64,000 bases of DNA from Fimbriosthenelais zetlandica (lineage: Eukaryota): positions 2,914,001-2,978,000 of the forward strand of contig OZ365112.1 of assembly GCA_977030845.1 (NCBI GenBank), written 5' to 3'. This document shows positions 5,505 to 47,123 of the stretch, in pieces (positions within the stretch are counted from its first letter, which is position 1; each line of letters opens with the position of its first letter). The notes below the pieces were generated by a model. It did not search any database. It saw only the letters and a program-made list of their open reading frames with translations, and was not told where the DNA came from. A program made the translations under genes and the position numbers.

Positions 5505-6231
5505 GCGATAATGATAGTTACGATTGATAACGATCATCGCATGTGTGCCCATCCACTCACGTTGTCAATGACTCCATACATTCTTCATGGCGATCGGCTT
5601 TCACTCATTGCCCAACTCCACTTTTAAACCATTTTCTCTGTTTTTTCTCACTGGTCCATCAATGCTGTAAAGTTTTGATAATTGAAAGAGCGCTTTGCCA
5701 TTAATTATCGCCTCTCCTTTGTTCCCTTCTGACGGATGTTTTTTTTCACCTCCGGTGCATCAGCCTCTCCTGCCTTTTTTAAACCTTTCAAAATGGTGTA
5801 GATTGGAAATTGAAGCACTGGCTGTGTAGTCATCGCCACATGGAGGTAAAAATAGCCCTGCCATTTGTACGGGCCAGGTAAAAATTACCTTCCCTCATTG
5901 CACCTATCGATCAATCTTCCTCATGTTTTTGTAGCTTCAAAAACAACCAACTTTCACTGAAGGCCCGAATGAGACTAGATTAATGCTTTACAAAGGCTTC
6001 TATAACATTATATTCTATATATAATATATACATATATGTATATATCTCATGTTGCTTCACATCTTAGCATGAATAATGTAACTGCCTCTATAGGATATAT
6101 CAGAACACTGAGATGACTCAATAGTTTCCTCTATAAATGTTTAAAACAAAAATAATGAAAAACACAAGTCATACATATGGTTCCCCCAAATCCAAGGATG
6201 CTATCTTTAGTCTATAGGGTCTGGAATTGCT

Positions 6232-6780
6232 ATAGTACTCGTTTTCCACTCTAATTGTTAGAGTACTCATTTGCCACTCTAATTGTTTGAGTACTCATTT
6301 GCCTCTTTGGCTACTAGAGTACTCATTTGCCTCTCTCATTGCTAGAGTACTCATTTGCCTCTCTCATTGCTAGAGTACTCATTTGCCTCTTTAGTTACTG
6401 GAGTACTCATTTACCACTCTAATTGCTAGAGTACTCATTTACCACTCTAATTGTCTCTCTCATTACTAGAGTACTCATTTGCCTCTTTAGTTACTGGAGT
6501 ACTCATTTACCACTCTAATTGCTAGAGTACTCATTTGCCTCTCTCATTGCTAGAGTACTCATTTGCCTCTTTAGTTACTGGAGTACTCATTTACCACTCT
6601 AATTGCTAGAGTACTCATTTACCACTCTAATTGCCTCTCTCATTACTAGAGTACTCATTTGCCTCTTTAGTTACTGGAGTACTCATTTACCACTCTAATT
6701 GCTAGAGTACTCATTTACCACTCTAATTGCCTCTCTCATTACTAGAGTACTCATTTGCCTCTTTAGCTGTTGCTAGAGTA
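6232..6780. repeat. Minisatellite, ~28-bp unit (agagtactcatttgcctctctcattgct and variants)
   Basis: About 19 tandem units sharing a GAGTACTC palindromic core; variant units recur in ordered blocks. Confidence 0.95.
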
Positions 6781-25718: not shown

Positions 25719-26200
25719 TCAGGTCATGTCATACATTAACCTGGCGTATTGCCCTTCCGATTTGAATAGGGGAATATATTTTTCATATCCTAAACGCCGC
25801 ACTATGTGTTCTTGGTTTGTTTCGACAAGTGCTAGTAGGAAGGCATTGAAGCGCCACAGTGGTCCTGTTTTGATATGATCAATAAAGGCTCCATTTTTTT
25901 CAAAATCGGTCGTCTCACTCTGTAACCAAATATTCAATTCACATTCAGACTTAACTTCTGAACAAACAACATTAATTTCTTCAACAATTTGATATACAAA
26001 CTGATATACCTTAATTATCTGCTTGATCTTCATGTCTACAACATCATACTTCTCCATAGTGGACCATGCAGGACGCAGTTGCATTTTCTCTTCCAAATTG
26101 GGCTTCTCATTTTTCAGCAGATTCTGTAATTCGCCTGATAGTTCTCTTTGCAGCTCTGGATTGTCACGATCCAGGAGAAGCATGCCTGTTTCCTTAGGTT
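25719..26200 (-). CDS. Terminal coding exon of CARD-domain gene; C-terminal CARD (death-fold) domain
   Basis: Acceptor cattgtcag|AA. The 160-aa open frame ends ...TTDFEKNGAFIDHIKTGPLWRFNAFLLALVETNQEHIVRRLG, matching the CARD helix 4-6 pattern (LLdiL..rG..AF.aFl.AL.eT.Q.hl..lL, cf. caspase-2 CARD). Minus-strand AATAAA near 25290. Confidence 0.75.
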
Positions 26201-26443
26201 CTGACAATGATGATGTTTAAATGCTTTTAAAATTGTTATACATGTATACAACGGGCATTGACGGGAAAACGTGACATTTTTGGTGAATTTTAGGTAACAG
26301 CACTGGTCATTTGTCCATTGGATGTTCAACTTTTGTTCCGAATCCACCAGAAATGATAAAACATTTCTAATCCGTGATATCAGGGGTATAAATATTTACC
26401 CTCCTTGTCTAAAACGACTGATACACTTTTGATTCTGATATAC

Positions 26444-26645
26444 CTTCACTGAACGGGGTCATGGGGAGACGGAGCAATGTTATAAAAGGTTCTAATTCAT
26501 TAAAACTGGTTAAAAGTACTGTTAGAGCCATTATGATAGGAAGCCTTCCCCAACGCTTGAAAAGCAAAAACCAAGGGTCAGAAGCCCATTTCAAAACAGC
26601 ATTGATAATTTTTCCTTTGAAACATACACCAGATTTGTCTAAACT
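26444..26645 (-). CDS. Candidate internal exon 5 of CARD gene
   Basis: Open frame (SLDKSGVCFK...PMTPFSE) after a pyrimidine tract; donor GAAG|GTATAT is phase 1, matching the terminal exon. Confidence 0.4.
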
Positions 26646-26833
26646 CTGCCACTTGCACTCACAGACAGACATGAGAAGAGAGAGTGATATATGTGTTATT
26701 GCCTTTAGTACACGTTACTGACGATTTTATATCTCAATATGTCTTTATTTATTAAATTTATACCTGTTTTATATGAATAAATCCTATTTATTTTTTTTTG
26801 TAAATCAATTTTATTCAGTAGGTGTACTGTTAC

Positions 26834-26907
26834 ATATAGTAGATATACACGTAACAACACAACAAGCCATCTCAGGGCAGAAAAAGCCCTGGTTTTCGTC
26901 CGGCTTC
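26834..26907 (-). CDS. Candidate internal exon 4 of CARD gene
   Basis: Acceptor ttgagctcag; phase 1 in, phase 0 out (TAT|GTAACA); keeps the frame (GSRTKTRAFSALRWLVVLLRVYLLY). Confidence 0.3.
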
Positions 26908-27220
26908 CTGAGCTCAAAATAAATAATACAATATGCGCGGGGTTAGTTCACTAATCACTGATAAATAAAAATAAATAAAAGAGAAAAGATGGTTTAAAAC
27001 AATGGTCTATAGTTGTCCATATATATATGCTTCCAGTCAGAAGCTACCACTTCCACTCCACTGACCAACCGTTAGAAATTATATAACTTTCCAATTGTAT
27101 CGATGCACGTCTCTATATAGACCCTAGACATTTCTATAATATATGTAATAATACGGCGAACCGTGGACTAAATACATTTAGTAGGGTATAAAGAATAACG
27201 GTAGATGTGACTATACTCAC

Positions 27221-27634
27221 CTTTTACATTGTAGCTGGAAACTTCTGACGGGTAGACGGGTATGTCTGGGTAGACGGGTATGTCTGGGTAGACGGGTATG
27301 TCTGGGTAGACGGGTATGTCTGGGTAGACGGTATGTCTGGGTAGACGGTATGTCTGGGTAGACGAGTCTACCTGGTGTTTGTGGGGTACTGAAATATTTT
27401 TTTCAAGTTCCTGAACTCTCGAATGGAGCTTGTAAAGACAAGCAAACCCAGCTATGCCTGCGCCATATTTGAGTAACTTTGAAACACCAACACCCTTGGG
27501 TTGTGTGTCACTCTTGGGTTGTGGGTAACTCTTGGGTGGTGGGTCACTCTTGGGTGGTGGGTCACTCTTGGGTGGTGGGTCACTCTTGGGTGGTGGGTCT
27601 AAATTGAGGTTCTCCAAACGTGATGTGATGCTGC
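27221..27634 (-). CDS. Exon 3, 3' part (downstream of CACTA insertion): Pro-rich PPPKSD repeats, hydrophobic segment, YPDIPV repeats
   Basis: ORF 27168-27617; donor AAAG|GTGAGT at 27221/27220; joins 30424-30460 in frame after removal of the element. Confidence 0.7.
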
Positions 27635-27636
27635 TA

Positions 27637-30423
27637 CACTGTTAAAATTTTGGAATTGATAACAGTCTGACACTGTTCCTGCAGAGAAAGTGCCACTGTT
27701 CTTGCTTGCCACTGTAAATTGGCCTTCATAACAGTGGCGCACTGTTGGTGTCGACACCGCTCACTTGCCACTGTTCCTGCAAGCTAGAAACAATGGCAAT
27801 CCCGCTGAAAACAGTGGGGCACTGTTCCTGTCATATGGTCTTGCCACTGTTACTGCACCTATAGCCAAGTTTTGCTTTCATAACAGTGGCCCACTGTTCC
27901 TGTCATAGTCTTGCCACTGTTCCTGTCATAGTCTTGCCACTGTTCCTGCAGCTATAGCCAAGTATTACCATTGCCACTGTTGATGCTCACTATCACTAAT
28001 GTCTTAATTAGCAGCCGCCATATACCAAGCCAGATAGTTTAGCATTAGACATTTTTGGGGATGGTTTGAATAGCAAGTAATATATTATTGTTAACATGTA
28101 TGTACATAATGTGCCATCAAGCATTAACACCTTTTTAAATTGACGAATTATTTGAGAAAATAGCTACAATACGTCTGGCTTGTACTGAACAAGTCAATAT
28201 AATTATGCCCCACTTCCCTCCACGCCAAGCCTGACCATGGATGTGGCTTTATAATGGCAGGGGTGAAAGCTAATTACCCTGAAATATTTAATTTGGAATT
28301 TATCAGCTTTTTATTTATTTTGTGATTCTTAAATTCGCGTTTTGGCAAAGTTTTCGTATTCCAGTTGATTGAAAGACTTTAATCTCGCGTGTCTTAATGT
28401 CACAATATGTTTTTAGTGCGGAAATCACGAAATTAAAGGGCACGCGAAATGTTAATATTTTACAGTACATGTGTACATATTTAATAAAGCTATAGGACAA
28501 TGGACGGATTAGTGTAGGCTTTATGTAGGAATGATGGGCCGTTGGTCAGTTGTACTCTGACTATTGAAGGGACAAGAGGTCTGTGGCGGACAAACATGGA
28601 CAATGAACATGTACATGGTAAGCATACTACTTTAAATAGCATACATTTGATCTTCAATTTGCTCATATTTTGGGCTTTTATTGTAGCTATAATAGACTCT
28701 ATGCGCATATCTTTTTTTCGTTTTCAGATTCAATGCCCCTCCATATTAATGAAGAATTGGACAACCACCCTCACAATCGATACTAGAAGTTAGACATGGT
28801 TTGTATATCTAATTGGGTAATACTTCCTATAGCTGTAGCTTATACTAGCATGCCGTGAGTTTAGCTCACACATTAAGTTCACACTTCCGGATGTACATAT
28901 GTATTTCTCTGAGTTCGTAAATCTGTTTTCTCATATTTCTGGCAGGAATATTAATGAAATTTGTTATATATCATTTGTCCATTTTGAAGAGGTATCTCAA
29001 TATAGAATTAAATAATAGTGAATTTTTAATTATAAAATGCATTGATGCTGGGGCGCGTCGGTTACAGAGGTGGGATTATGGTAATCCCCCAACAAGACGG
29101 TTCCTTTGAAGATGCCGGCTTTACACCCGCCCCCGCCATGTCCCACCTCTTCGGCGCCAAATTTCCCTCCACTTCATTCAATTGAATGTGATAGGCACAA
29201 CAGACATTTGAATTCAGCTAGTATGGGGTATATTTTATAAAGTTATGAACCGCCTCAATTAAAGAGTTAATTCACCTGGATTTAAAACAACGAATCTACA
29301 GGCGAAGGTCTCTATTATAATTAGTAATGAAGTGTACTTATTGGTATTTTTACAGGATGGAACTAAAGGAGTAAGGAAGAGAACTGCAAAGTTAAATGAA
29401 CCCACAAGCCTAAACCAATTCCTTCACCAAACAGATACAGAGGTGAGAAAGCCTAGGTCATTATTCTATTTTAAAGTCTGTCTGGAATACTTTTTTTTTT
29501 AAATCTAATGAAATTATCTGGCAATTCAGAAGGACAAAGATTACTAATCATATTTAAGAAAAGAATTATTCGTACAAATCAGTTGTTTTTACATTTCGGT
29601 GATTGAAAGATTGAACTGTCATCCTTCTTTACCCACCCCCGTGTACCCACCCCTTCATCACCCGGGCCTACTGGTGAGAAAGCTTCGTCCCACGGGAGAC
29701 TACATAGATGGAAACACAATAGGGCTGGCGAAATGGAGGTAATTATACATTAATATTATTTTTTAACTTGTCTGGGTTAAACACATAATGCACACACCTT
29801 TCTAGGAATTATGAATTTGCAGATAGAATTGTAAAGTTTCCCACTATTATTCATATCTGGCAAATAATCCTACTAAGAAGACACATATTGTATCATGTAC
29901 ACTATATTATCTTGCAGGGAAAGAACCACTCTCCAATCTACTTCACAAGGAAAATGACTCATATTAAATTATGGGAAAATGATGAAATGATGAATTATGG
30001 TGAATAATAATGATGTTCCCCAAAATAAAGATTAATCCCCTGGAATAGAACAGCGGGAGGGGAGGGAGGGAAGGGAAGGGATAACTGGGGTGCAAGAACA
30101 GTGGCAATACTAGTCCCAGAACAGTGGCATATAGGCAACACTAACAATGGCAAATAGATGACACCAACAGTGGCAAGTCGGAGACGCCAACAGTGGCAAG
30201 TAGGAAGCACCAACAGTGGCAATTAGTAGACACCAACAGTGGCAATTAGTAGACACCAACAGTGGCAATTAGTAGACACCAACAGTGGCAATTAGGAGAC
30301 ACCAACAGTGGCACCATAACAGTGGCACTTCCCTTGCAGGAACCATGGTAATTTCTATCCCGATTTTGCCACTGTTGGTGCAGCTGCACCAACAGTGTCC
30401 CACTGTTAGGAATTGTAACAGTG
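27637..30423. mobile_element. Non-autonomous CACTA/EnSpm (CMC)-like DNA transposon, 2,787 bp
   Basis: Termini CACTGTTAAAATT / CACTGTTACAATT (reverse complement), 12/13 match. TA duplicated at 27635-36 and 30424-25. Dense subterminal CCACTGTT/AACAGTGG repeats at both ends (27637-27985, 30095-30423). No transposase ORF recognised. Confidence 0.85.
29356..30007 (+). CDS. Spliced cargo ORF inside the CACTA element (exons 29356-29442, 29610-29738, 29918-30007), unknown product
   Basis: Three AG/GT-bounded exons, all phase 0 and open: DGTKGVRKRTAKLNEPTSLNQFLHQTDTE / IELSSFFTHPRVPTPSSPGPTGEKASSHGRLHRWKHNRAGEME / GKNHSPIYFTRKMTHIKLWENDEMMNYGE*. AATAAA at 30024-29. Confidence 0.5.
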
Positions 30424-30460
30424 TAACTTCCCGTGTGTGTGCCGCTTGTGATGTTGTTGA
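30424..30460 (-). CDS. Exon 3, 5' part (upstream of CACTA insertion)
   Basis: Acceptor tttttaccag|TCA; reads STTSQAAHTREV and continues SSITSRLENLNLD at 27634 once the element and one TA are removed. Confidence 0.7.
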
Positions 30461-30946
30461 CTGGTAAAAACATTCGATATGGACGAAAAATATATGATTT
30501 TAATGTAGGGAAATGTGAAAATGGAGGTCATATCAAGTAGGAATGGAAATAAGAGGAGAAAGAAATACAATTACACTGTAAAAACATCAATGCTAAGAGA
30601 AATAAATACCTTGCGCACAAAGCTTTCAGGTCTGTAGCGTTGAATGTGTCAGTGCGACTTTAGAAGTATTACATTTTAGTGGAAACACATCACATATATA
30701 ACTAGACATGATGTAGGAATGGGCTTTGATAATCAAATAAAAAAGTGTATAAGTCTACGATTCCAATAAAATAATTATGATATGATTGTTCGTTAAAAGC
30801 AAGATCATACCAAATAAAACATATTAAGATAACTTTGTTGCTTAGTTTCAAGGTCATGTAGATAGCTGTTTTAATTCGTTCTTCACATTTTACATTAGAA
30901 ACCCCACTAATAATTTCCAGGATAATACAAATAAAAGATAAAATAC

Positions 30947-31201
30947 CTTTTTTGCCCCGAGCTTGGTCTCATCCAATACAAGTGTTCGCCAGAGCATGGC
31001 CTCATCCAATTCGTTTGTTAGCGCGACCTTGACGTCATCCGCGACTACATAAGAATCTAGTTTATTTAGATATTTGAACACTAGAGGCAGGACCATAGTC
31101 CTGCTTATATAGTCGCCATTCGCCTCTATTAGCTTCTTTGTTCCATCTGGAAGTTCTTGCTCCTCGGGATTAGTAGGTGCCCCCGTAGATGAAGCCATCA
31201 T
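30947..31201 (-). CDS. First coding exon (exon 2) of CARD gene; N-terminal CARD-like helices
   Basis: Acceptor tttctacag at 31204, ATG at 31201, donor AAG|GTATTT (phase 0). 85 aa, including KKLIEANGDYISRTMVLPLVFKYL, which loosely resembles CARD helices 1-2. Confidence 0.65.
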
Positions 31202-31384
31202 TTCTGTAGAAAAAGTGAATGTTGCTATGGGTACATGTTTTCAGAATATGATTGAATTATGCCATATCAATTTTTTACAGTAATATTTTCTCGTGAACGT
31301 ATATATTTTTATTTATTTATATAAGCTTGTGTATTGTTGGAATCCACAGTGAAGTAACCAATACAATGATAGAAGTATACTTAC

Positions 31385-31530
31385 CTTTCCGTCAGGAGCC
31401 TGTTTCAAAACAATTCTTTAGACTATGGTTATGAAACAAGTCCCAGATCCCCTTACTACCGAATTTTCTCCCCAGGAACTTAGTTGACTCGATCTCCCTG
31501 AGAAAGATACAGTATAACTGTACGGGTAGA
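31385..31530 (-). other. Probable non-coding exon 1 of CARD gene (5' boundary approximate)
   Basis: Strong donor AAG|GTAAGT at 31385/31384; contains a short hairpin MITE at 31395-31444. Confidence 0.45.
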
Positions 31531-34421
31531 AAGCAAAATGGCGGACTCTATGGAACAATATCCGAAGTTGATATAGGCCTAGATTGAAAGACATGCTTCA
31601 GGCTATTTCTAAGTTTTATCTATATGTGTCATCTATATTTGTTTTGTGTGTTGTATACATGTGCGAGTGGGGGAAAGGGGGGGGGAGGGGGGGTTACACT
31701 GTGGGGAACCGATTAGAATTAGCTAGTGGCATTTTACCGTTAAATCAGCGCCGTTTTTAAGAGTGTATCAATATGGTATTCACTGACGTTACGAAGATTT
31801 CTGTTAAAACACGAAATGAGCAAATGAGTGAAATGCAAGGTACTAGTGCTGATGTGGCGTATGATGTTATAAATAATGATGTCGAAATTGCTTTTTGCAA
31901 TTTTTTAGCATTATGACTGTACATTATAGACAATGCATGCTCCCTCTCTGACCACACTCCAACAAATTATACATTCTCCCCACCATATATTTAGACCGCT
32001 TTCCATCCATAGGTCTACAGCATAAAGATCAAGTTGAACTTATGAAGCTATGTACAGGGGAAATGAGAGCCGTAAACTCCATAGAATCGCATTGACAATG
32101 GTCACTAGGTCTTTAATTTGCAAAGCCAAGATATAATCTCCCTGCCACAAACAATGCGACCCAGAGGCAATATTTCAGTCAAGATGGGTTGAATATTTTC
32201 ACCTGCATCGATGTTGACGGCCACCAGGATCGCTCAGCTGCGTGGAATTTCTTAATGATTTGTGAGAAGATTCTGGATGAGATATCAGATCAGTGGGCGA
32301 AAGATCAGACTTCAGGGCTCAGGACTTCCGAAGATCACCGGCATCAAACATAAAAAGTGCCATCAGGCAGATTGTCCAGAAAAATCGCTTTGAGTGTCTA
32401 AGGCAATGGACACCGTTTGGAATGAGCGAATCACCAATGAAGACTTCATATCCAGCACAAAGCGATGTCTTCTGAGACCTATGGATGGAAAGCGGTCTAA
32501 ATATATGGTATGTGTGTGTAGAAACTGGACCATTGGATACCTGCCTAATTAGACACTGCATGATTGGACACTAAAGACTATATTAGACACCGTTAAATAG
32601 GACACTCAGAAAAAGTTGACACCTAGAAAATGGCATATATGTACTGTAATGAATCGTGGAAGAAAAACCAAACACCTGCTACTCCTGGAGATGTCCTCTG
32701 ATATCCTCAGATGTCCTCGGCTGACGAGACTGTCTGGATCTTACCAACGGAGGACTTTATGTGAGATAATTATGTCATAAAACTCATATAATCTGACCGG
32801 CACTTATTAAATAGGTGAAATATGGGTACAATATCCAGAGATCATATAAAGAGAAAGTACATGAGCTTCTTATCATGTCTTATCTACATTATGTTGACAT
32901 AATGACACGAGGATCTGGCATTTCTTTATAATCAGAAGTGGCCTTGTGCTGGCGGTGATGGGATATAAGGCCTGGGGGTTGGTAGCTACTGATAGCTAAC
33001 AGGAGTGGGTGGGCGGGGGGGGGGGGGGGTGAGGAGGTTGGAGGAGGTAGCTTGGTGGGTGATAGGTGCAAGATATGTTGTTTTTTCATCATATGTTACC
33101 ATCTGAAAATATTGAGATGCAATACAGGAGATATTGATATTTAGCTCATATCTGTATTTGAATAGATGACTTGGTCGGCTCTGTGTGCAGCACCAACCCC
33201 AGTTTAATTTTCATGCCTTTTTCTATCTGGTCATGCATGAATGTGGTCACGGATGGTCATGAATGGTCATGACTCTTGTGTAATATATCATGTAATAGGT
33301 GTATTTGGTCATTTGTACTTCACCTTCTGACCATTAAATCATGGAATCTGGTATTTCTAATGTCTAATGTAGCGTATAATGATTATGATAACACAATCTA
33401 AAGATTTTCAGACATAAGTTGGTAATAATGTATGCTCTGACTCATGATATTTACCGTACTGGGCGGCCATCTTGGTTTTTAGGTTAGTTTCCGAGTACAT
33501 TTGTCCTTCAAATCACTTGACCTTCAGATATGAAAAACTTCAATCTATACATGAGGTTTCTTTGAAAGACAACATCTGAATATAATTCAAACAAAGTAGG
33601 AGGTGTCTATTTATATTTTTGGATCTAATTATCGCAGGAAGACCAACAAAACGCCTAAATGCATCATTTTGTAATGCCTATTACTTGCCATTAACACTGA
33701 GCCATGGAATTTTAAAGTTTCAAATGTACTTTGCTTGACTTGGGGGCATTTTAATAACGGCATGGTAACATGAGCCATGTACCTATCTTCATTTTTTGAT
33801 AAAGGCCTCTTCGTATCAGAATGAACTATTTTGGACTTTTCGTGAAAATTACGTCAAAATCCGTGCATAACTTTTCCTGTAATGTTGCTAACTAACACTG
33901 AATACATTACCTCCCCAGCGGAGGTAATTATATTTTTAGTTTCAATTATATTCATCATTAATTTATTAGCAGTATGGAATATTGTACATTAGTTATGGTA
34001 TAGCCCTACTATGAAACACTGCCCTTTTTTAAAATGGGACATTTTATTTGCCTATTAGGAATAAGAAGCAGAAGGAATAAAATAATAATGCAGTCTATAC
34101 AGAACTACCTGCATTAATAACTTGGTTTAAGTTAATCCACGGCATGTATTTCTATACTGATTTTGTTACATCTACATGTATACATGTATGTATGTATGTA
34201 TGTATAAGACACGATATATATTATTATCTGAATGTAAACAGCACTATTAAAAGAAACCCCAGTAAACGTACCCCATTATCTGACCACTAGTTGGTCCCCT
34301 TTACTTCCAGTTGATTGGTCACCAGGTCACCCCAATTCCCGTCATGCACCTCAGTGCACACAACTGCGTGCACTGTTTAGTGCTTAACTGTTTAGCCCAT
34401 CAAGTATTCGTCACATTTATA

Positions 34422-34915
34422 CAGTGGATACTCACTAAATGAGTATCTCACTAAACCGACCATTTCAACAAAGCGACCATTCCACTAAAGCCAAGTCTCC
34501 TACGACATTAAAGCAGAAAGGGTGAGAGTTATAGATGATAGAGTTCGCTATGCACTGTTCACTAAATAGTCTGAACCAAATGTTTCCTCTTTGTTATTTC
34601 ATACTCACGAAAATGACCATGGATATTATATGATCACTAAAGTCTCATTTTGGGAGACTCATCGGCTTACTAATGCAAACGTACCCCTTGAAACTGAACC
34701 TTTAATGCTCTTATATAGACTGTTCAAACTAAGTTGGTCCGAAAGCGCAGTACAAATGTATGGTGGTTTCAAATAAACTTAGTTTGGACAGAGTGTCATT
34801 TGTGGGCTGCTTCAGAGAATAGTCCTATGTCTATGTGGTGTTATTACATTTGGTTGTGAACAGTATAAGTGAGGTGGTCGCTTTAGTGGGGAGGTGGTTA
34901 AGCGAGGTCCCACTG
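34422..34915. mobile_element. Tc1/mariner-pogo-like MITE (paralog of 22369-22867)
   Basis: TA|CAGTGG...CCACTG|TA. Confidence 0.75.
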
Positions 34916-35181
34916 TATACTGGCATTCAGTGGGCGTGGCTGGCATTCAGTGGGCGTGACTGTGAATGTGGCGGGACTAATGTGCCTAGTAACCACCAGG
35001 TGGCTTCACATCCTCTCCTGTCCTTTCAATGTCATCCTGGAAGTTGACACTTTAGGAAAGAATGTTCACACTTGTGACCAAGATGGCTGACTTTTCAAAT
35101 GTCACTCCCCAACCTCTTCAATCGTTCTGTCTTTCCAATTACTTCTTCATACCCACGCCTTCCCCTGCGTGACCACTTTTA

Positions 35182-35380
35182 TGCCGGACCCATACAGACG
35201 CGATTTGCCCAGGCGATGCAGAGCGATAGTATATTTCGATTCACACCCAAAACTTGTAATTTTGTCAGTGGTTGGTCTTAGCTAGGTGTAAATGACTTAA
35301 AATTTCAAACATTGGTTGTGTAAAGAAATATACTATCGCTCTGCATCGCTTGGGCAAATCGCCTCTGCCTGGGCTCGGCA
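35182..35380. mobile_element. PIF/Harbinger-like MITE (paralog of 23368-23568)
   Basis: Same TIRs with TTA flanks. Confidence 0.8.
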
Positions 35381-36676
35381 TTACAGGCATTTCCCATTCA
35401 AGATTCTCAATTTGTATTTTACATTTAAATATCACTAAACAAATCCAGAAATATAGGTCTGTCATTGATTTTTTTAGTACAGAAACAAATATCTTTACCC
35501 CGTTTGACTTCCTTTACCCCTTTTGACTTCCTTTACCTCTTTTCCTTTAATTCCAAACTACATATTCTCTCTGAGCCAAGAAACCATGTGGAAAAAGCCT
35601 TCCGCACTTCTGGTTGTAGATATATGTACTAGAATTGTACCCGTATTTCTATATGTTCAACTTAAGAATAGGATCATATGAACCTAAAGCACTAAGGCAG
35701 ACTACTCTCTGTAAGAGGAAGCAATCATACCCTTGGAATGAACATTTCAGCCATATAGTAAGGCGCAGTACTAAGGTAATATAATTGTAGTGACTTACTT
35801 TAAGCGCTCTTGTCCCCCTCTTATTTCATTTACCAGACACTTACATCTAAGATGAGAGGCACTCTCCTATGTGAACTACCAGAAAAGGCGAATCAGATGC
35901 CATCTTTCCTGAAGAAAGTGCTTTATTTTGAGCAAAAGGCTTTAACTTTTCATGAAAACAGGCCATTACAATTGTGCAAAAGACGCATTGTCTTAAAAAT
36001 TGTCCTGAAAACTGTAATGAAAGACACATATGTTTGTCTGAGATTTGAGAAATATATTTGGTCTTATTTGTGGTCTCATAATATTCGGAAATGTAACTCA
36101 TTTTCCATCGTATTCGGTAGTAATATGATACTTACTTTTGACAGGAAAGCCAGACGCAAAAATGTGTTTTGAAAGATAGGGCCTCGGCACTGAGATGCCT
36201 TCTCCGATGCGGGAATTCTACACCCAACGACCAAAAAACTCAAGGAATCTCATTAAGCATCTCTTGAATTTTGTGGTGGAAATTTGCCTTTGATATGAAC
36301 ATATCTGTGATTTTTTCGCGGCCATCTTTCCCGGTCTCCTCTTTCTTGGAGGGACTGTGGCCGGGGAAATAATTACATCAATTAATCTGTGAGAGCGTGG
36401 TTTCACGCTTCATTGAGCACGCCTCTTCTCCCGCCGTTGGGCATTGATTACCTCCAGGGTCCTGATCATAACTTGTTTTTCTCATTTTCCGGCTGGCAGC
36501 GGTAAACAACTTAAGCTAAACATAATATAGGTGGTGTGCGGGGAAGATGGCCAAGTACCCAACTCTAAAGCCGGTTTGCTTGATTATATGCTGATCCTGA
36601 AATAGCCGAGTACAAAGGAAGATTACCAGGAATACCTTCATGAAGTGTAACTTGTAAATGCCTCCAATAGCAACGA

Positions 36677-46903: not shown

Positions 46904-47123
46904 NNNNNNNNNNNNNNNNNNNNNNNNNNNNNNNNNNNNNNNNNNNNNNNNNNNNNNNNNNNNNNNNNNNNNNNNNNNNNNNNNNNNNNNNNNNNNNNNN
47001 NNNNNNNNNNNNNNNNNNNNNNNNNNNNNNNNNNNNNNNNNNNNNNNNNNNNNNNNNNNNNNNNNNNNNNNNNNNNNNNNNNNNNNNNNNNNNNNNNNNN
47101 NNNNNNNNNNNNNNNNNNNNNNN
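46904..47123. other. Assembly gap (220 N)
   Basis: Run of N. Confidence 1.

What the first reader, a model, noticed from the sequence alone, without database searches (positions are those of the whole stretch)
27221..30460. CACTA-like transposon inserted inside a coding exon; excision restores the frame exactly
The element 27637-30423 has matching CACTG termini and a TA duplication. Deleting it plus one TA joins 30460-30424 to 27634 and gives an uninterrupted frame (STTSQAAHTREV-SSITSRLENLNLDPPPKSD...). That frame lies between a canonical acceptor and a GTGAGT donor and matches the phase of the upstream exon. Since the flanking exon is still open, this is probably a young, possibly polymorphic knockout of an immune/apoptosis-type gene. 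Inference: perfect excision, or splicing-out of the element (known for maize En/Spm insertions), could switch the gene back on.
Basis: partly seen in the sequence, partly recalled or inferred. Interest (0 to 1): 0.85.

Follow-up and report, generated by a model that had tools for sequence, protein, structure and literature searches.

The report
Transposon inside a probable CARD-gene exon
A 2.8-kb defective cut-and-paste transposon of the CACTA type sits in what is probably, but not provably, a coding exon of a fast-evolving invertebrate CARD (cell-death/immune adaptor) gene. This is an ordinary kind of mutation, and no data were available to show whether it is young or reversible.

Summary
Window 27637-30423 is a real 2,787-bp non-autonomous DNA transposon with these features:
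- CACTGTTA...TAACAGTG termini and a TA on each side.
- All 19 GCCACTGTT motifs of the 64-kb window lie in its two ends (0.39 expected by chance).
- No transposase.

Removing it plus one TA gives an open 150-codon exon. That exon's phases fit a 5' exon with the ATG and a 3' pair of exons encoding a divergent CARD domain, 365 aa in all.

- Exons 1 and 2 have no homologues anywhere.
- The piece upstream of the element is only 37 nt, so the "exact" frame restoration has roughly a 1-in-5 chance expectation.
- The only relatives (CARD part only) start with Met exactly where exon 3 begins, so a CARD-only gene is a live rival.

New here:
- The element's own end (…TTTTAACAG|TG) gives an in-phase acceptor. 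Exon 1 could splice past the element to yield an intact 354-aa ORF, much as maize dSpm termini do. The allele therefore need not be null.
- Read-through instead stops after 148 aa.

Youth, polymorphism, excision and transcription could not be tested: no sequencing runs, orthologues or other copies were reachable. Other first-stage notes of this scan overlap this stretch.

Verdict: a new member of a known kind, of moderate to low interest.

The parts
27635..27636 (.). TA flanking the element (putative target-site duplication, copy 1)
30424..30425 (.). TA flanking the element (putative target-site duplication, copy 2)
27637..30423 (.). 2,787-bp non-autonomous CACTA/CMC-like DNA transposon. Its longest open segment is 91 codons, it has no Pfam domain, and there is no second copy in the window.
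27637..27649 (+). Terminal inverted repeat CACTGTTAAAATT (3' end of the element in the gene's orientation). Its reverse complement ...aaaattttaaCAG|TG forms an in-phase acceptor; the exon would start at 27638.
30411..30423 (-). Terminal inverted repeat CACTGTTACAATT (12/13 identical to the other terminus)
27650..27992 (.). Subterminal region with 8 exact GCCACTGTT motifs (6 on +, 2 on -), four AACAGTG-N3-CACTGTT palindromes, and a 23-bp repeat of 2.5 copies at 27891-27948
30083..30410 (.). Subterminal region with 11 exact GCCACTGTT motifs (10 on -, 1 on +), including a 23-bp tandem array of 8.4 copies at 30120-30313
30947..31203 (-). Predicted exon 1: acceptor ctacag|AA, ATG at 31201, 85 codons, donor AAG|gtattt, phase 0. 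It has no homologue and no domain.
30424..30460 (-). Putative 5' piece of exon 2 (STTSQAAHTREV plus 1 nt) behind the acceptor tttttaccag. It is the only in-phase AG in the open stretch upstream of the element.
30269..30271 (-). First in-frame stop if exon 2 is read into the element (truncation after residue 148)
27221..27634 (-). 3' piece of exon 2: 138 open codons with no in-frame ATG, PPPKSD x5 and VYPDIP x4 (18-bp tandem repeats), a short hydrophobic stretch, donor AAG|gtgagt, ends in phase 1
26010..26200 (-). Exon 3 (acceptor ttgtcag|AA; G+AA gives Glu): N-terminal half of the CARD-like domain. It holds an in-frame ATG at 26183.
25920..26009 (-). 90-nt in-frame GT..AG intron inside the 162-aa ORF. 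Its removal improves the alignment to P0002, and the same intron position is seen in locus L001.
25719..25919 (-). Exon 4: C-terminal half of the CARD-like domain (GPLWRFNAFLLALVETNQEHI) and the stop codon

Best explanation
A defective (transposase-less) cut-and-paste transposon of the CACTA/EnSpm-Mirage-Chapaev (CMC) type inserted at a TA. The site lies 37 nt inside the second coding exon of a lineage-specific four-coding-exon gene on the minus strand. The gene encodes an orphan N-terminal region, a Ser/Pro-rich repeat linker with a short hydrophobic stretch, and a C-terminal CARD, 365 aa before insertion.

In the present allele there are two possible outcomes:
- Use of the normal exon-2 acceptor (30460) reads into the element and stops after 148 aa, before the CARD.
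- The element's own terminus, ...TTTTAACAG|TG, offers an in-phase 3' splice site. Exon 1 could then join exon 2 just past the insertion, giving a 354-aa protein in which 12 linker residues are replaced by one Cys.

The allele is therefore more likely hypomorphic or isoform-shifted than a clean null.

Shown: the element's anatomy, the ORF arithmetic, the splice-signal positions and phases, and the CARD affinity of exons 3-4. Inferred: that exons 1-2 are coding and joined to the CARD exons, which acceptor is used, any mobility, and the age of the insertion.
For: Element:
- Termini and TA flanks.
- 19 GCCACTGTT motifs against 0.39 expected, all in the two ends and inverted between them.
- Tandem and palindromic subterminal repeats.
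- No ORF over 91 codons and no Pfam hit.

Superfamily features in the literature:
- Animal CACTA elements with CAC..GTG termini and a 2-bp TSD (PMC6004678).
- A 2-bp TSD in SmTRC1 (PMC1636069).
- CMCT lineages share CA..TG termini and 2-5-bp TSDs (PMC12730594).

Gene:
- The empty-allele CDS is 1,098 nt with one terminal stop.
- Exon 2b has 138 open codons, no in-frame ATG (so it needs an upstream ATG exon), and a GTGAGT donor whose phase continues the CARD ORF.
- The acceptor at 30460 is the only in-phase AG upstream of the element and the best-looking acceptor, with C at -3 and a T-run.

CARD:
- phmmer hit to P0002, E 2.7e-6 library-wide. P0002 carries Pfam CARD at 3.4e-10.
- The spliced domain aligns to P0002 at 36% identity, E 4e-16.
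- A profile that includes this window's exon 4 hits the MDA5, BCL10, RAIDD and CED-3 CARDs in the PDB, best E 8.5e-5.
- Atlas neighbours are CARD clusters, commonest in Mollusca.

Rescue route: acceptor at 27638 is in phase, and the resulting ORF is intact at 354 aa.
Against: - Exons 1 and 2 have no homologue in 5.8 billion clusters.
- Exon 1 matches no domain or structure.
- Half of exon 2b is 18-bp tandem repeat, which inflates ORF length.
- The upstream piece is only 12 codons, so frame restoration is weak evidence (about 0.2 by chance).
- P0002 and the L001 homologue start with Met exactly at the position of this gene's exon-3 start, and exon 3 has its own in-frame ATG at 26183.
- No transcript, read or orthologous empty-site evidence could be obtained.
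- Only one copy of the element was seen, so mobility and age are unknown.
Confidence: 0.5

Rival explanations
1. The real gene is a CARD-only gene (exons 3-4, translation from ATG 26183, about 123 aa). The upstream 'exons' 1 and 2 are 5'-UTR exons, another transcript, or chance ORFs. The transposon then lies in non-coding sequence and knocks out nothing.
For: - The only relatives found, P0002 (MASAGNKPLWDKRNP...) and the L001 gene (MATGGQLPPWDKRNP..., acceptor 9 nt upstream of the ATG), begin with Met at the residue that aligns with this gene's exon-3 start.
- No ORF resembling exon 1 or 2 lies upstream in L001.
- Exons 1-2 have no homologues.
- The exon 2b ORF is partly tandem repeat.
Against: - 138 open codons end at a consensus AAG|GTGAGT donor in exactly the phase that continues the exon-3 ORF.
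- A further ATG-started 85-codon exon sits in a compatible phase behind a 5'-UTR intron. My rough estimate is about 0.02 by chance for the exon-2b ORF and its phase match alone, given a real donor.
- A 700-nt multi-exon leader with long upstream ORFs would be unusual.
Confidence: 0.25
2. Exons 1-2 are coding, but the element is intronic. Exon 2 has always started downstream of it (27611, ttggag|AAC, or an AAG in the PPPKSD repeats), or the element-borne acceptor at 27638 has long been the normal one (an exonised transposon end). The open 37-nt piece is then coincidence and the insertion may be old.
For: - In-phase AGs exist at 27638, 27611, 27584 and further on.
- The present allele gives an intact 354-aa ORF through 27638.
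Against: - The downstream acceptors are poor, with G or A at -3 and weak pyrimidine tracts. The one at 30460 has a T-run and CAG.
- The TA, termini and subterminal arrays show no decay, although a single copy cannot be dated.
Confidence: 0.15
3. Classification rival, independent of the two above: the element belongs to another superfamily that makes or targets TA (Tc1/mariner/pogo, or a PHIS/ISL2EU-type element), not to CMC.
For: - TA flanks are the hallmark of Tc1/mariner (general knowledge).
- Harbinger-related lineages with TA TSDs exist (PMC12730594).
- No transposase is present to decide.
Against: - The termini are CACTG..CAGTG (the CAC..GTG of CMC), not the CAGT-type start I recall for Tc1-like elements.
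- About 340 bp at each end carry roughly ten short motifs in both orientations, as in En/Spm, rather than the 2-3 sites of an IR-DR.
- Animal CACTA elements with a 2-bp TSD are documented.
Confidence: 0.2

Closest known systems
Animal CACTA/EnSpm (CMC superfamily) non-autonomous elements, e.g. TRC elements such as SmTRC1, ENS1_Cis and CMC-NA MITEs (PMC1636069, PMC6004678)
   Same: CAC...GTG termini, 2-bp flanking duplication, no transposase, and a short TIR followed by repeat-rich subterminal regions.
   Different: The core is CACTG rather than CACTA or CCC. At 2.8 kb it is much longer than a MITE. No autonomous partner, second copy or transposase link was shown here, so membership rests on end anatomy alone.
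Maize dSpm/En-I insertions in exons of a2 and bz. [quoted passage not shown] 1990, cited in PMC4219821; the paper itself is not held, so details are from memory).
   Same: A defective CACTA-type element in an exon whose terminal sequence, read in the gene's direction, ends ...YAG|TG and can serve as a 3' splice site, so that most or all of the element can be removed from the pre-mRNA.
   Different: Here only the acceptor is convincing. No good donor lies at the element's 5' end, so the predicted rescue uses the upstream exon's donor and drops 37 nt of exon. Nothing is shown at the RNA level, and the host is an animal.
Invertebrate CARD-only and tandem-CARD proteins (P0002; Atlas CARD clusters commonest in Mollusca), and more distantly the BCL10, MDA5, RAIDD and CED-3 CARDs
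   Same: The C-terminal 100 residues share the helix 4-6 motif GP.WRF.AFL.AL.ET.QE.I. The profile hits solved CARDs.
   Different: There is no direct Pfam CARD hit. The N-terminal 235 residues (exons 1-2) are orphan sequence not seen in the relatives.

Membership tests
CMC (CACTA/EnSpm-Mirage-Chapaev) DNA transposons | Termini 5'-CAC...GTG-3' (CACTA/CACTG core) in short TIRs | tested here: met
   CACTGTTA...TAACAGTG, 8/8 then 12/13
CMC (CACTA/EnSpm-Mirage-Chapaev) DNA transposons | Target-site duplication of 2-4 bp (2 bp in animal CACTA/TRC elements; PMC1636069, PMC6004678, PMC12730594) | tested here: met
   TA at 27635-27636 and at 30424-30425. Caveat: TA is a palindrome, there is a single copy and no empty site, so a TSD cannot be told from a TIR extension.
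CMC (CACTA/EnSpm-Mirage-Chapaev) DNA transposons | Subterminal regions packed with short repeated motifs in direct and inverted orientation (En/Spm-like; general knowledge) | tested here: met
   19 GCCACTGTT against 0.39 expected, all within about 350 bp of the ends; palindromic pairs; 23-bp arrays
CMC (CACTA/EnSpm-Mirage-Chapaev) DNA transposons | DDE transposase with a Transposase_21-like core, either in the element or in an autonomous partner sharing its ends | not testable with these tools
   The element has no such ORF. The rest of the genome was not searchable. Other first-stage notes mention CACTA elements in this genome, but these are unchecked.
CMC (CACTA/EnSpm-Mirage-Chapaev) DNA transposons | Mobility: several copies at different sites, or an empty site | not testable with these tools
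   No second copy in the window. Metagenome scans were blank. No sequencing runs were listed.
Tc1/mariner | TA target duplication | tested here: met
   TA on both sides
Tc1/mariner | Family-typical TIRs (CAGT-type start, few transposase sites per end) and a DD(E/D) transposase | tested here: inconclusive
   The ends start CACTG and carry about ten motifs each. The comparison with Tc1 ends is from memory, and there is no transposase to test.
CARD (death-fold) domain proteins | Significant match to the Pfam CARD model (PF00619) | tested here: not met
   No CARD hit for the exon-3/4 ORF or its pieces, even at E up to 10. The spliced domain could not be submitted by reference.
CARD (death-fold) domain proteins | Transitive or profile similarity to bona fide CARDs | tested here: met
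   Match to P0002 at E 4e-16 pairwise and 2.7e-6 library-wide. P0002 carries Pfam CARD at 3.4e-10. Profile A1 hits the MDA5, BCL10, RAIDD and CED-3 CARDs.
CARD (death-fold) domain proteins | Six-helix death fold | tested here: inconclusive
   The single-sequence AlphaFold model was helical but had mean pLDDT 45 and included the 30 intron-encoded residues. It was not used for fold search.
Exon insertions rescued by transposon-terminal splice sites (maize dSpm type) | Element lies in an exon and its terminus provides a usable splice site in the gene's orientation | tested here: inconclusive
   An in-phase ...ttttaaCAG|TG acceptor is present and the resulting ORF is intact. The exon status of the site is unproven.
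Exon insertions rescued by transposon-terminal splice sites (maize dSpm type) | Transcripts that use that site | not testable with these tools
   No RNA runs were listed.

The most novel reading that the evidence does not exclude
An animal CACTA-type element whose conserved terminus (...YYAACAG|TG) doubles as a functional 3' splice site. Exon insertions would then be spliced around and give in-frame hypomorphs rather than nulls. This would be an animal counterpart of the maize dSpm terminal splice sites, acting here on a rapidly evolving CARD immune/apoptosis gene and possibly segregating as a presence/absence allele.
Probability: 0.15. Interest if true: 0.6.

Novelty: new member of a known kind. 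Interest (0 to 1): 0.33.

Why it matters
If the exon model and polymorphism were confirmed, this would be a natural, possibly reversible or leaky, allele of an invertebrate CARD gene. It would also be a handle on an active CACTA-type family in an animal genome, where such elements are far less studied than in plants. The in-phase acceptor in the element's terminus would make a testable parallel to the classic maize Spm-suppressible alleles. As it stands it is one well-formed defective transposon in a poorly supported gene model, which is common in repeat-rich invertebrate genomes.

Tried and rejected
- Sequencing runs for 25700-31400 and for 25600-26200: none was listed. Read laying could therefore not be used, and there is no test of transcription, junctions or the empty allele.
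- Exhaustive HMMER search of exon 3/4 against 1.84 billion representatives: only 3 weak hits, one of them (P0001) a spurious repeat protein. The species' own proteins are evidently not in the collection.
- Exact-product look-ups of the exon-1 ORF and the ATG-started exon-3 ORF: not on record.
- Homologue searches with exon 2b and exon 1: nothing.
- Metagenome scans with the 24-nt terminus and with three spaced subterminal motifs: 0 hits.
- Pfam on ten ORFs inside the element: nothing.
- Rfam on 25000-32000: nothing.
- The bacterial promoter/terminator scan is irrelevant and at shuffle level.
- AlphaFold of the unspliced exon-3/4 ORF: pLDDT 45, discarded.
- Exon 1 as a CARD (claimed in a sister note): no support from the Atlas, Pfam, hhalign against the CARD profile, or the PDB.
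- A possible 48-nt micro-exon in intron 1 (about 30657-30610): rejected, because the phase-0 frame has a stop (read).
- A 52-nt intron in exon 3: rejected, because it would shift the frame. The 90-nt intron fits instead.
- Earlier-findings look-ups by sequence and by motif word: blank.
Full report
**1. What is at the coordinates**

Read on the minus strand, which is the strand of the proposed gene, the sequence runs ...tttttaccag|TCAACAACATCACAAGCGGCACACACACGGGAAGT-TA-CACTGTTACAATTCC... and, 2.8 kb later...CCAAAATTTTAACAGTG-TA-GCAGCATCACATCACGTTTGGAG....
- The two ends are inverted copies: CACTGTTA is 8/8 identical and the first 13 nt are 12/13 identical. Each is flanked by TA.
- The 9-mer GCCACTGTT occurs 19 times in the 64-kb window against 0.39 expected from shuffles, and none of 100 shuffles reaches 19.
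- Every copy lies within about 350 bp of one of the two ends: 6+/2- on the left and 1+/10- on the right.
- The right end holds a 23-bp tandem array of 8.4 units. The left end holds 2.5 perfect 23-bp units.
- Five sites are head-to-head palindromes, AACAGTG-NNN-CACTGTT (family D6).
- The 2.1-kb core is AT-rich. It has no open segment longer than 91 codons and no Pfam match in its ten longest ORFs. Rfam finds nothing.
- There is no second copy in the window.

This is the anatomy of a non-autonomous cut-and-paste transposon, and it cannot be a chance inverted repeat.

**2. Which kind of transposon**

No transposase is present, so only the ends can be judged.
- CAC...GTG termini, a 2-bp flanking duplication and motif-rich subterminal regions fit the CACTA/EnSpm branch of the CMC superfamily.
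- The literature held here documents animal CACTA elements with exactly these features:
  - SmTRC1 has a 2-bp duplication (PMC1636069).
  - The wider CMCT clade has 'CA..TG termini ... 2 to 5 bp TSDs' (PMC12730594).
- TA flanks are also the hallmark of Tc1/mariner. TA-duplicating Harbinger relatives also exist.
- I put CMC at about 0.7. The rival can only be settled by an autonomous partner.
- Other first-stage notes of this scan mention CACTA-type elements elsewhere in this genome, one of them said to be complete. I could not check them.

**3. The gene model**

On the minus strand the model is:
- a 5'-UTR exon ending GGAAAG|gtaagt at 31385;
- exon 1, 31203-30947, with acceptor ctacag|, ATG at 31201, 85 codons, donor AAG|gtattt, phase 0;
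- the interrupted exon 2;
- exon 3, from 26200, with acceptor ttgtcag|AA;
- exon 4, ending with the stop at 25719.

Splicing phases:
It starts in phase 0 and ends in phase 1. The leftover G joins AA of exon 3 to give Glu and continues the long ORF.

The 90-nt intron:
- The 162-codon ORF holds an in-frame 90-nt GT..AG intron at 26009-25920.
- Removing it raises the BLASTP score to P0002 from 45 to 59 bits and cuts the gaps from 37 to 7.
- The homologous gene in locus L001 has an intron at the same position.

Predicted products:
- The empty-allele CDS is 1,098 nt, or 365 aa, with one terminal stop.
- Read-through of the element stops after residue 148, at 30271-30269.

**4. What the gene is**

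Exons 3-4 are a divergent CARD.
- Pfam does not hit them directly.
- The exhaustive search finds P0002, which Pfam calls CARD at 3.4e-10.
- The spliced domain aligns to both halves of P0002.
- A small profile of this window's exon 4 with P0002 and P0003 hits the MDA5, BCL10, RAIDD and CED-3 CARDs and nothing else in the PDB.
- Atlas neighbours are CARD clusters, commonest in Mollusca.
- 'Immune/apoptosis-type' is therefore fair.

Exons 1-2 are orphan sequence.
- Exon 1 is not recognisably a CARD or anything else.
- Exon 2 is an orphan Ser/Pro-rich linker. More than half of it is made of two in-frame 18-bp tandem repeats.

**5. Is the element really inside a coding exon?**

For:
- Exon 2b has 138 open codons and no in-frame ATG, so if it is coding it must receive its start from upstream.
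- It ends at a consensus GTGAGT donor in the phase that exon 3 needs.
- In the reconstructed empty allele, the frame stays open for only 13 codons above 30460. The only in-phase AG upstream of the element is the one at 30460, and it also has the best acceptor context.

Against:
- The upstream piece is 12 codons, so the 'exact restoration' is expected by chance about one time in five.
- Nothing homologous supports exon 1 or exon 2.
- Both relatives of the CARD part begin with Met at precisely the residue that aligns with this gene's exon-3 boundary: MASAGNKPLWDKRNP and MATGGQLPPWDKRNP against ..E-PKETGMLLLDRDNP.
- Exon 3 has its own ATG at 26183. A CARD-only gene with a non-coding leader is therefore a serious rival.

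About 0.1 is left unassigned.

**6. How the present allele would behave**

- No GT within 200 nt of the element's 5' end matches more than 5 of 9 donor consensus positions. Clean removal of the element as its own intron is therefore unlikely.
- The other end, read in the gene's direction, is ...attccaaaattttaaCAG|TG-TA-GC... . The AG lies 2 nt inside the element and is in phase 0.
- Exon 1 could therefore splice straight to 27638 and give ...LGAKK-C-SSITSRLENL.... That ORF is intact at 354 aa, with 12 linker residues lost and one Cys gained.
- This is the same logic as the splice sites in the termini of maize dSpm. The title of Menssen et al. 1990 is cited in PMC4219821. The paper itself is not held, so the details are from memory.
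- It is a prediction only. If used, the allele is leaky rather than null.
- Excision needs a transposase source, which was not shown. By general knowledge of cut-and-paste elements it usually leaves footprints. In this repeat linker any net change that is a multiple of 3 would probably be tolerated, so 'perfect' excision is not required. Retaining both TAs (+2) would shift the frame.

**7. What could not be done**

- No sequencing run was listed for the locus. Transcription, junctions, heterozygosity and empty alleles are therefore untested.
- The species' proteins are absent from the protein collections.
- Metagenome scans for the element's ends were blank.
- Age cannot be estimated from a single copy.

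**8. Verdict**

The feature is a well-preserved defective CACTA/CMC-like transposon, a new member of a known kind. It lies in a plausible but unverified coding exon of an orphan-plus-CARD gene. The one point that goes beyond the ordinary is the in-phase acceptor in the element's terminus, which is cheap to test with RT-PCR.

Noticed in passing
window 25920-26009 (minus strand); L001 7668-8116: The 162-aa ORF of the CARD exon hides a 90-nt in-frame GT..AG intron. Removing it makes the spacing between the VV and GPLW motifs identical to P0002 (29 residues). The homologue in L001 has a roughly 450-nt intron at the same codon.
   Followed up: yes
window 26183-26200; L001 7446-7460; P0002 residues 1-15: Both relatives of the CARD part start with Met (MA[ST][AG]G...WDKRNP) exactly where this gene's exon 3 begins, a few nt after an acceptor. 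This suggests that an ancestral CARD-only gene either acquired new 5' coding exons here or has a long non-coding leader.
   Followed up: partly
window 22192-23582 and 34245-35394: Direct repeats of about 0.7 plus 0.5 kb at 93-95% identity bracket the whole CARD locus. There is also an inverted 210-bp piece (23362-23569 against 35386-35181). This was already flagged by another first-stage note (s1-184632).
   Followed up: partly
window 28500-29750, + strand (inside the element): Several consensus-like donors lie on the strand antisense to the host gene (for example GAG|gtgagaaag twice, ATG|gtaagca, CC|gtgagttt) next to short open segments. None has a Pfam match. This is the subject of another note (s1-184662). 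It could be remnants of the autonomous element's spliced transcript or a captured fragment.
   Followed up: partly
window 23888-24669; 6230-6780; 52623-53310; 22835-23155: Further tandem-repeat blocks, some giving long spurious ORFs (for example EGPDI... repeats at 23874-24149 and PTQCQ repeats at 22835-23138).
   Followed up: no
window 46904-47123: A run of 220 N (assembly gap or mask), left untouched.
   Followed up: no
window 30610-30657 (minus strand, intron 1): A GC-richer 48-nt stretch between ...ctaaag| and CAAG|gtattt looks like a micro-exon but has a stop in the phase that exon 1 requires. It is probably not used.
   Followed up: partly
P0001 (687 aa): The top hit of the exhaustive protein search is a repetitive 'protein' (7 matched stretches, no Pfam). 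It looks like a translated tandem repeat and is not a relative.
   Followed up: partly
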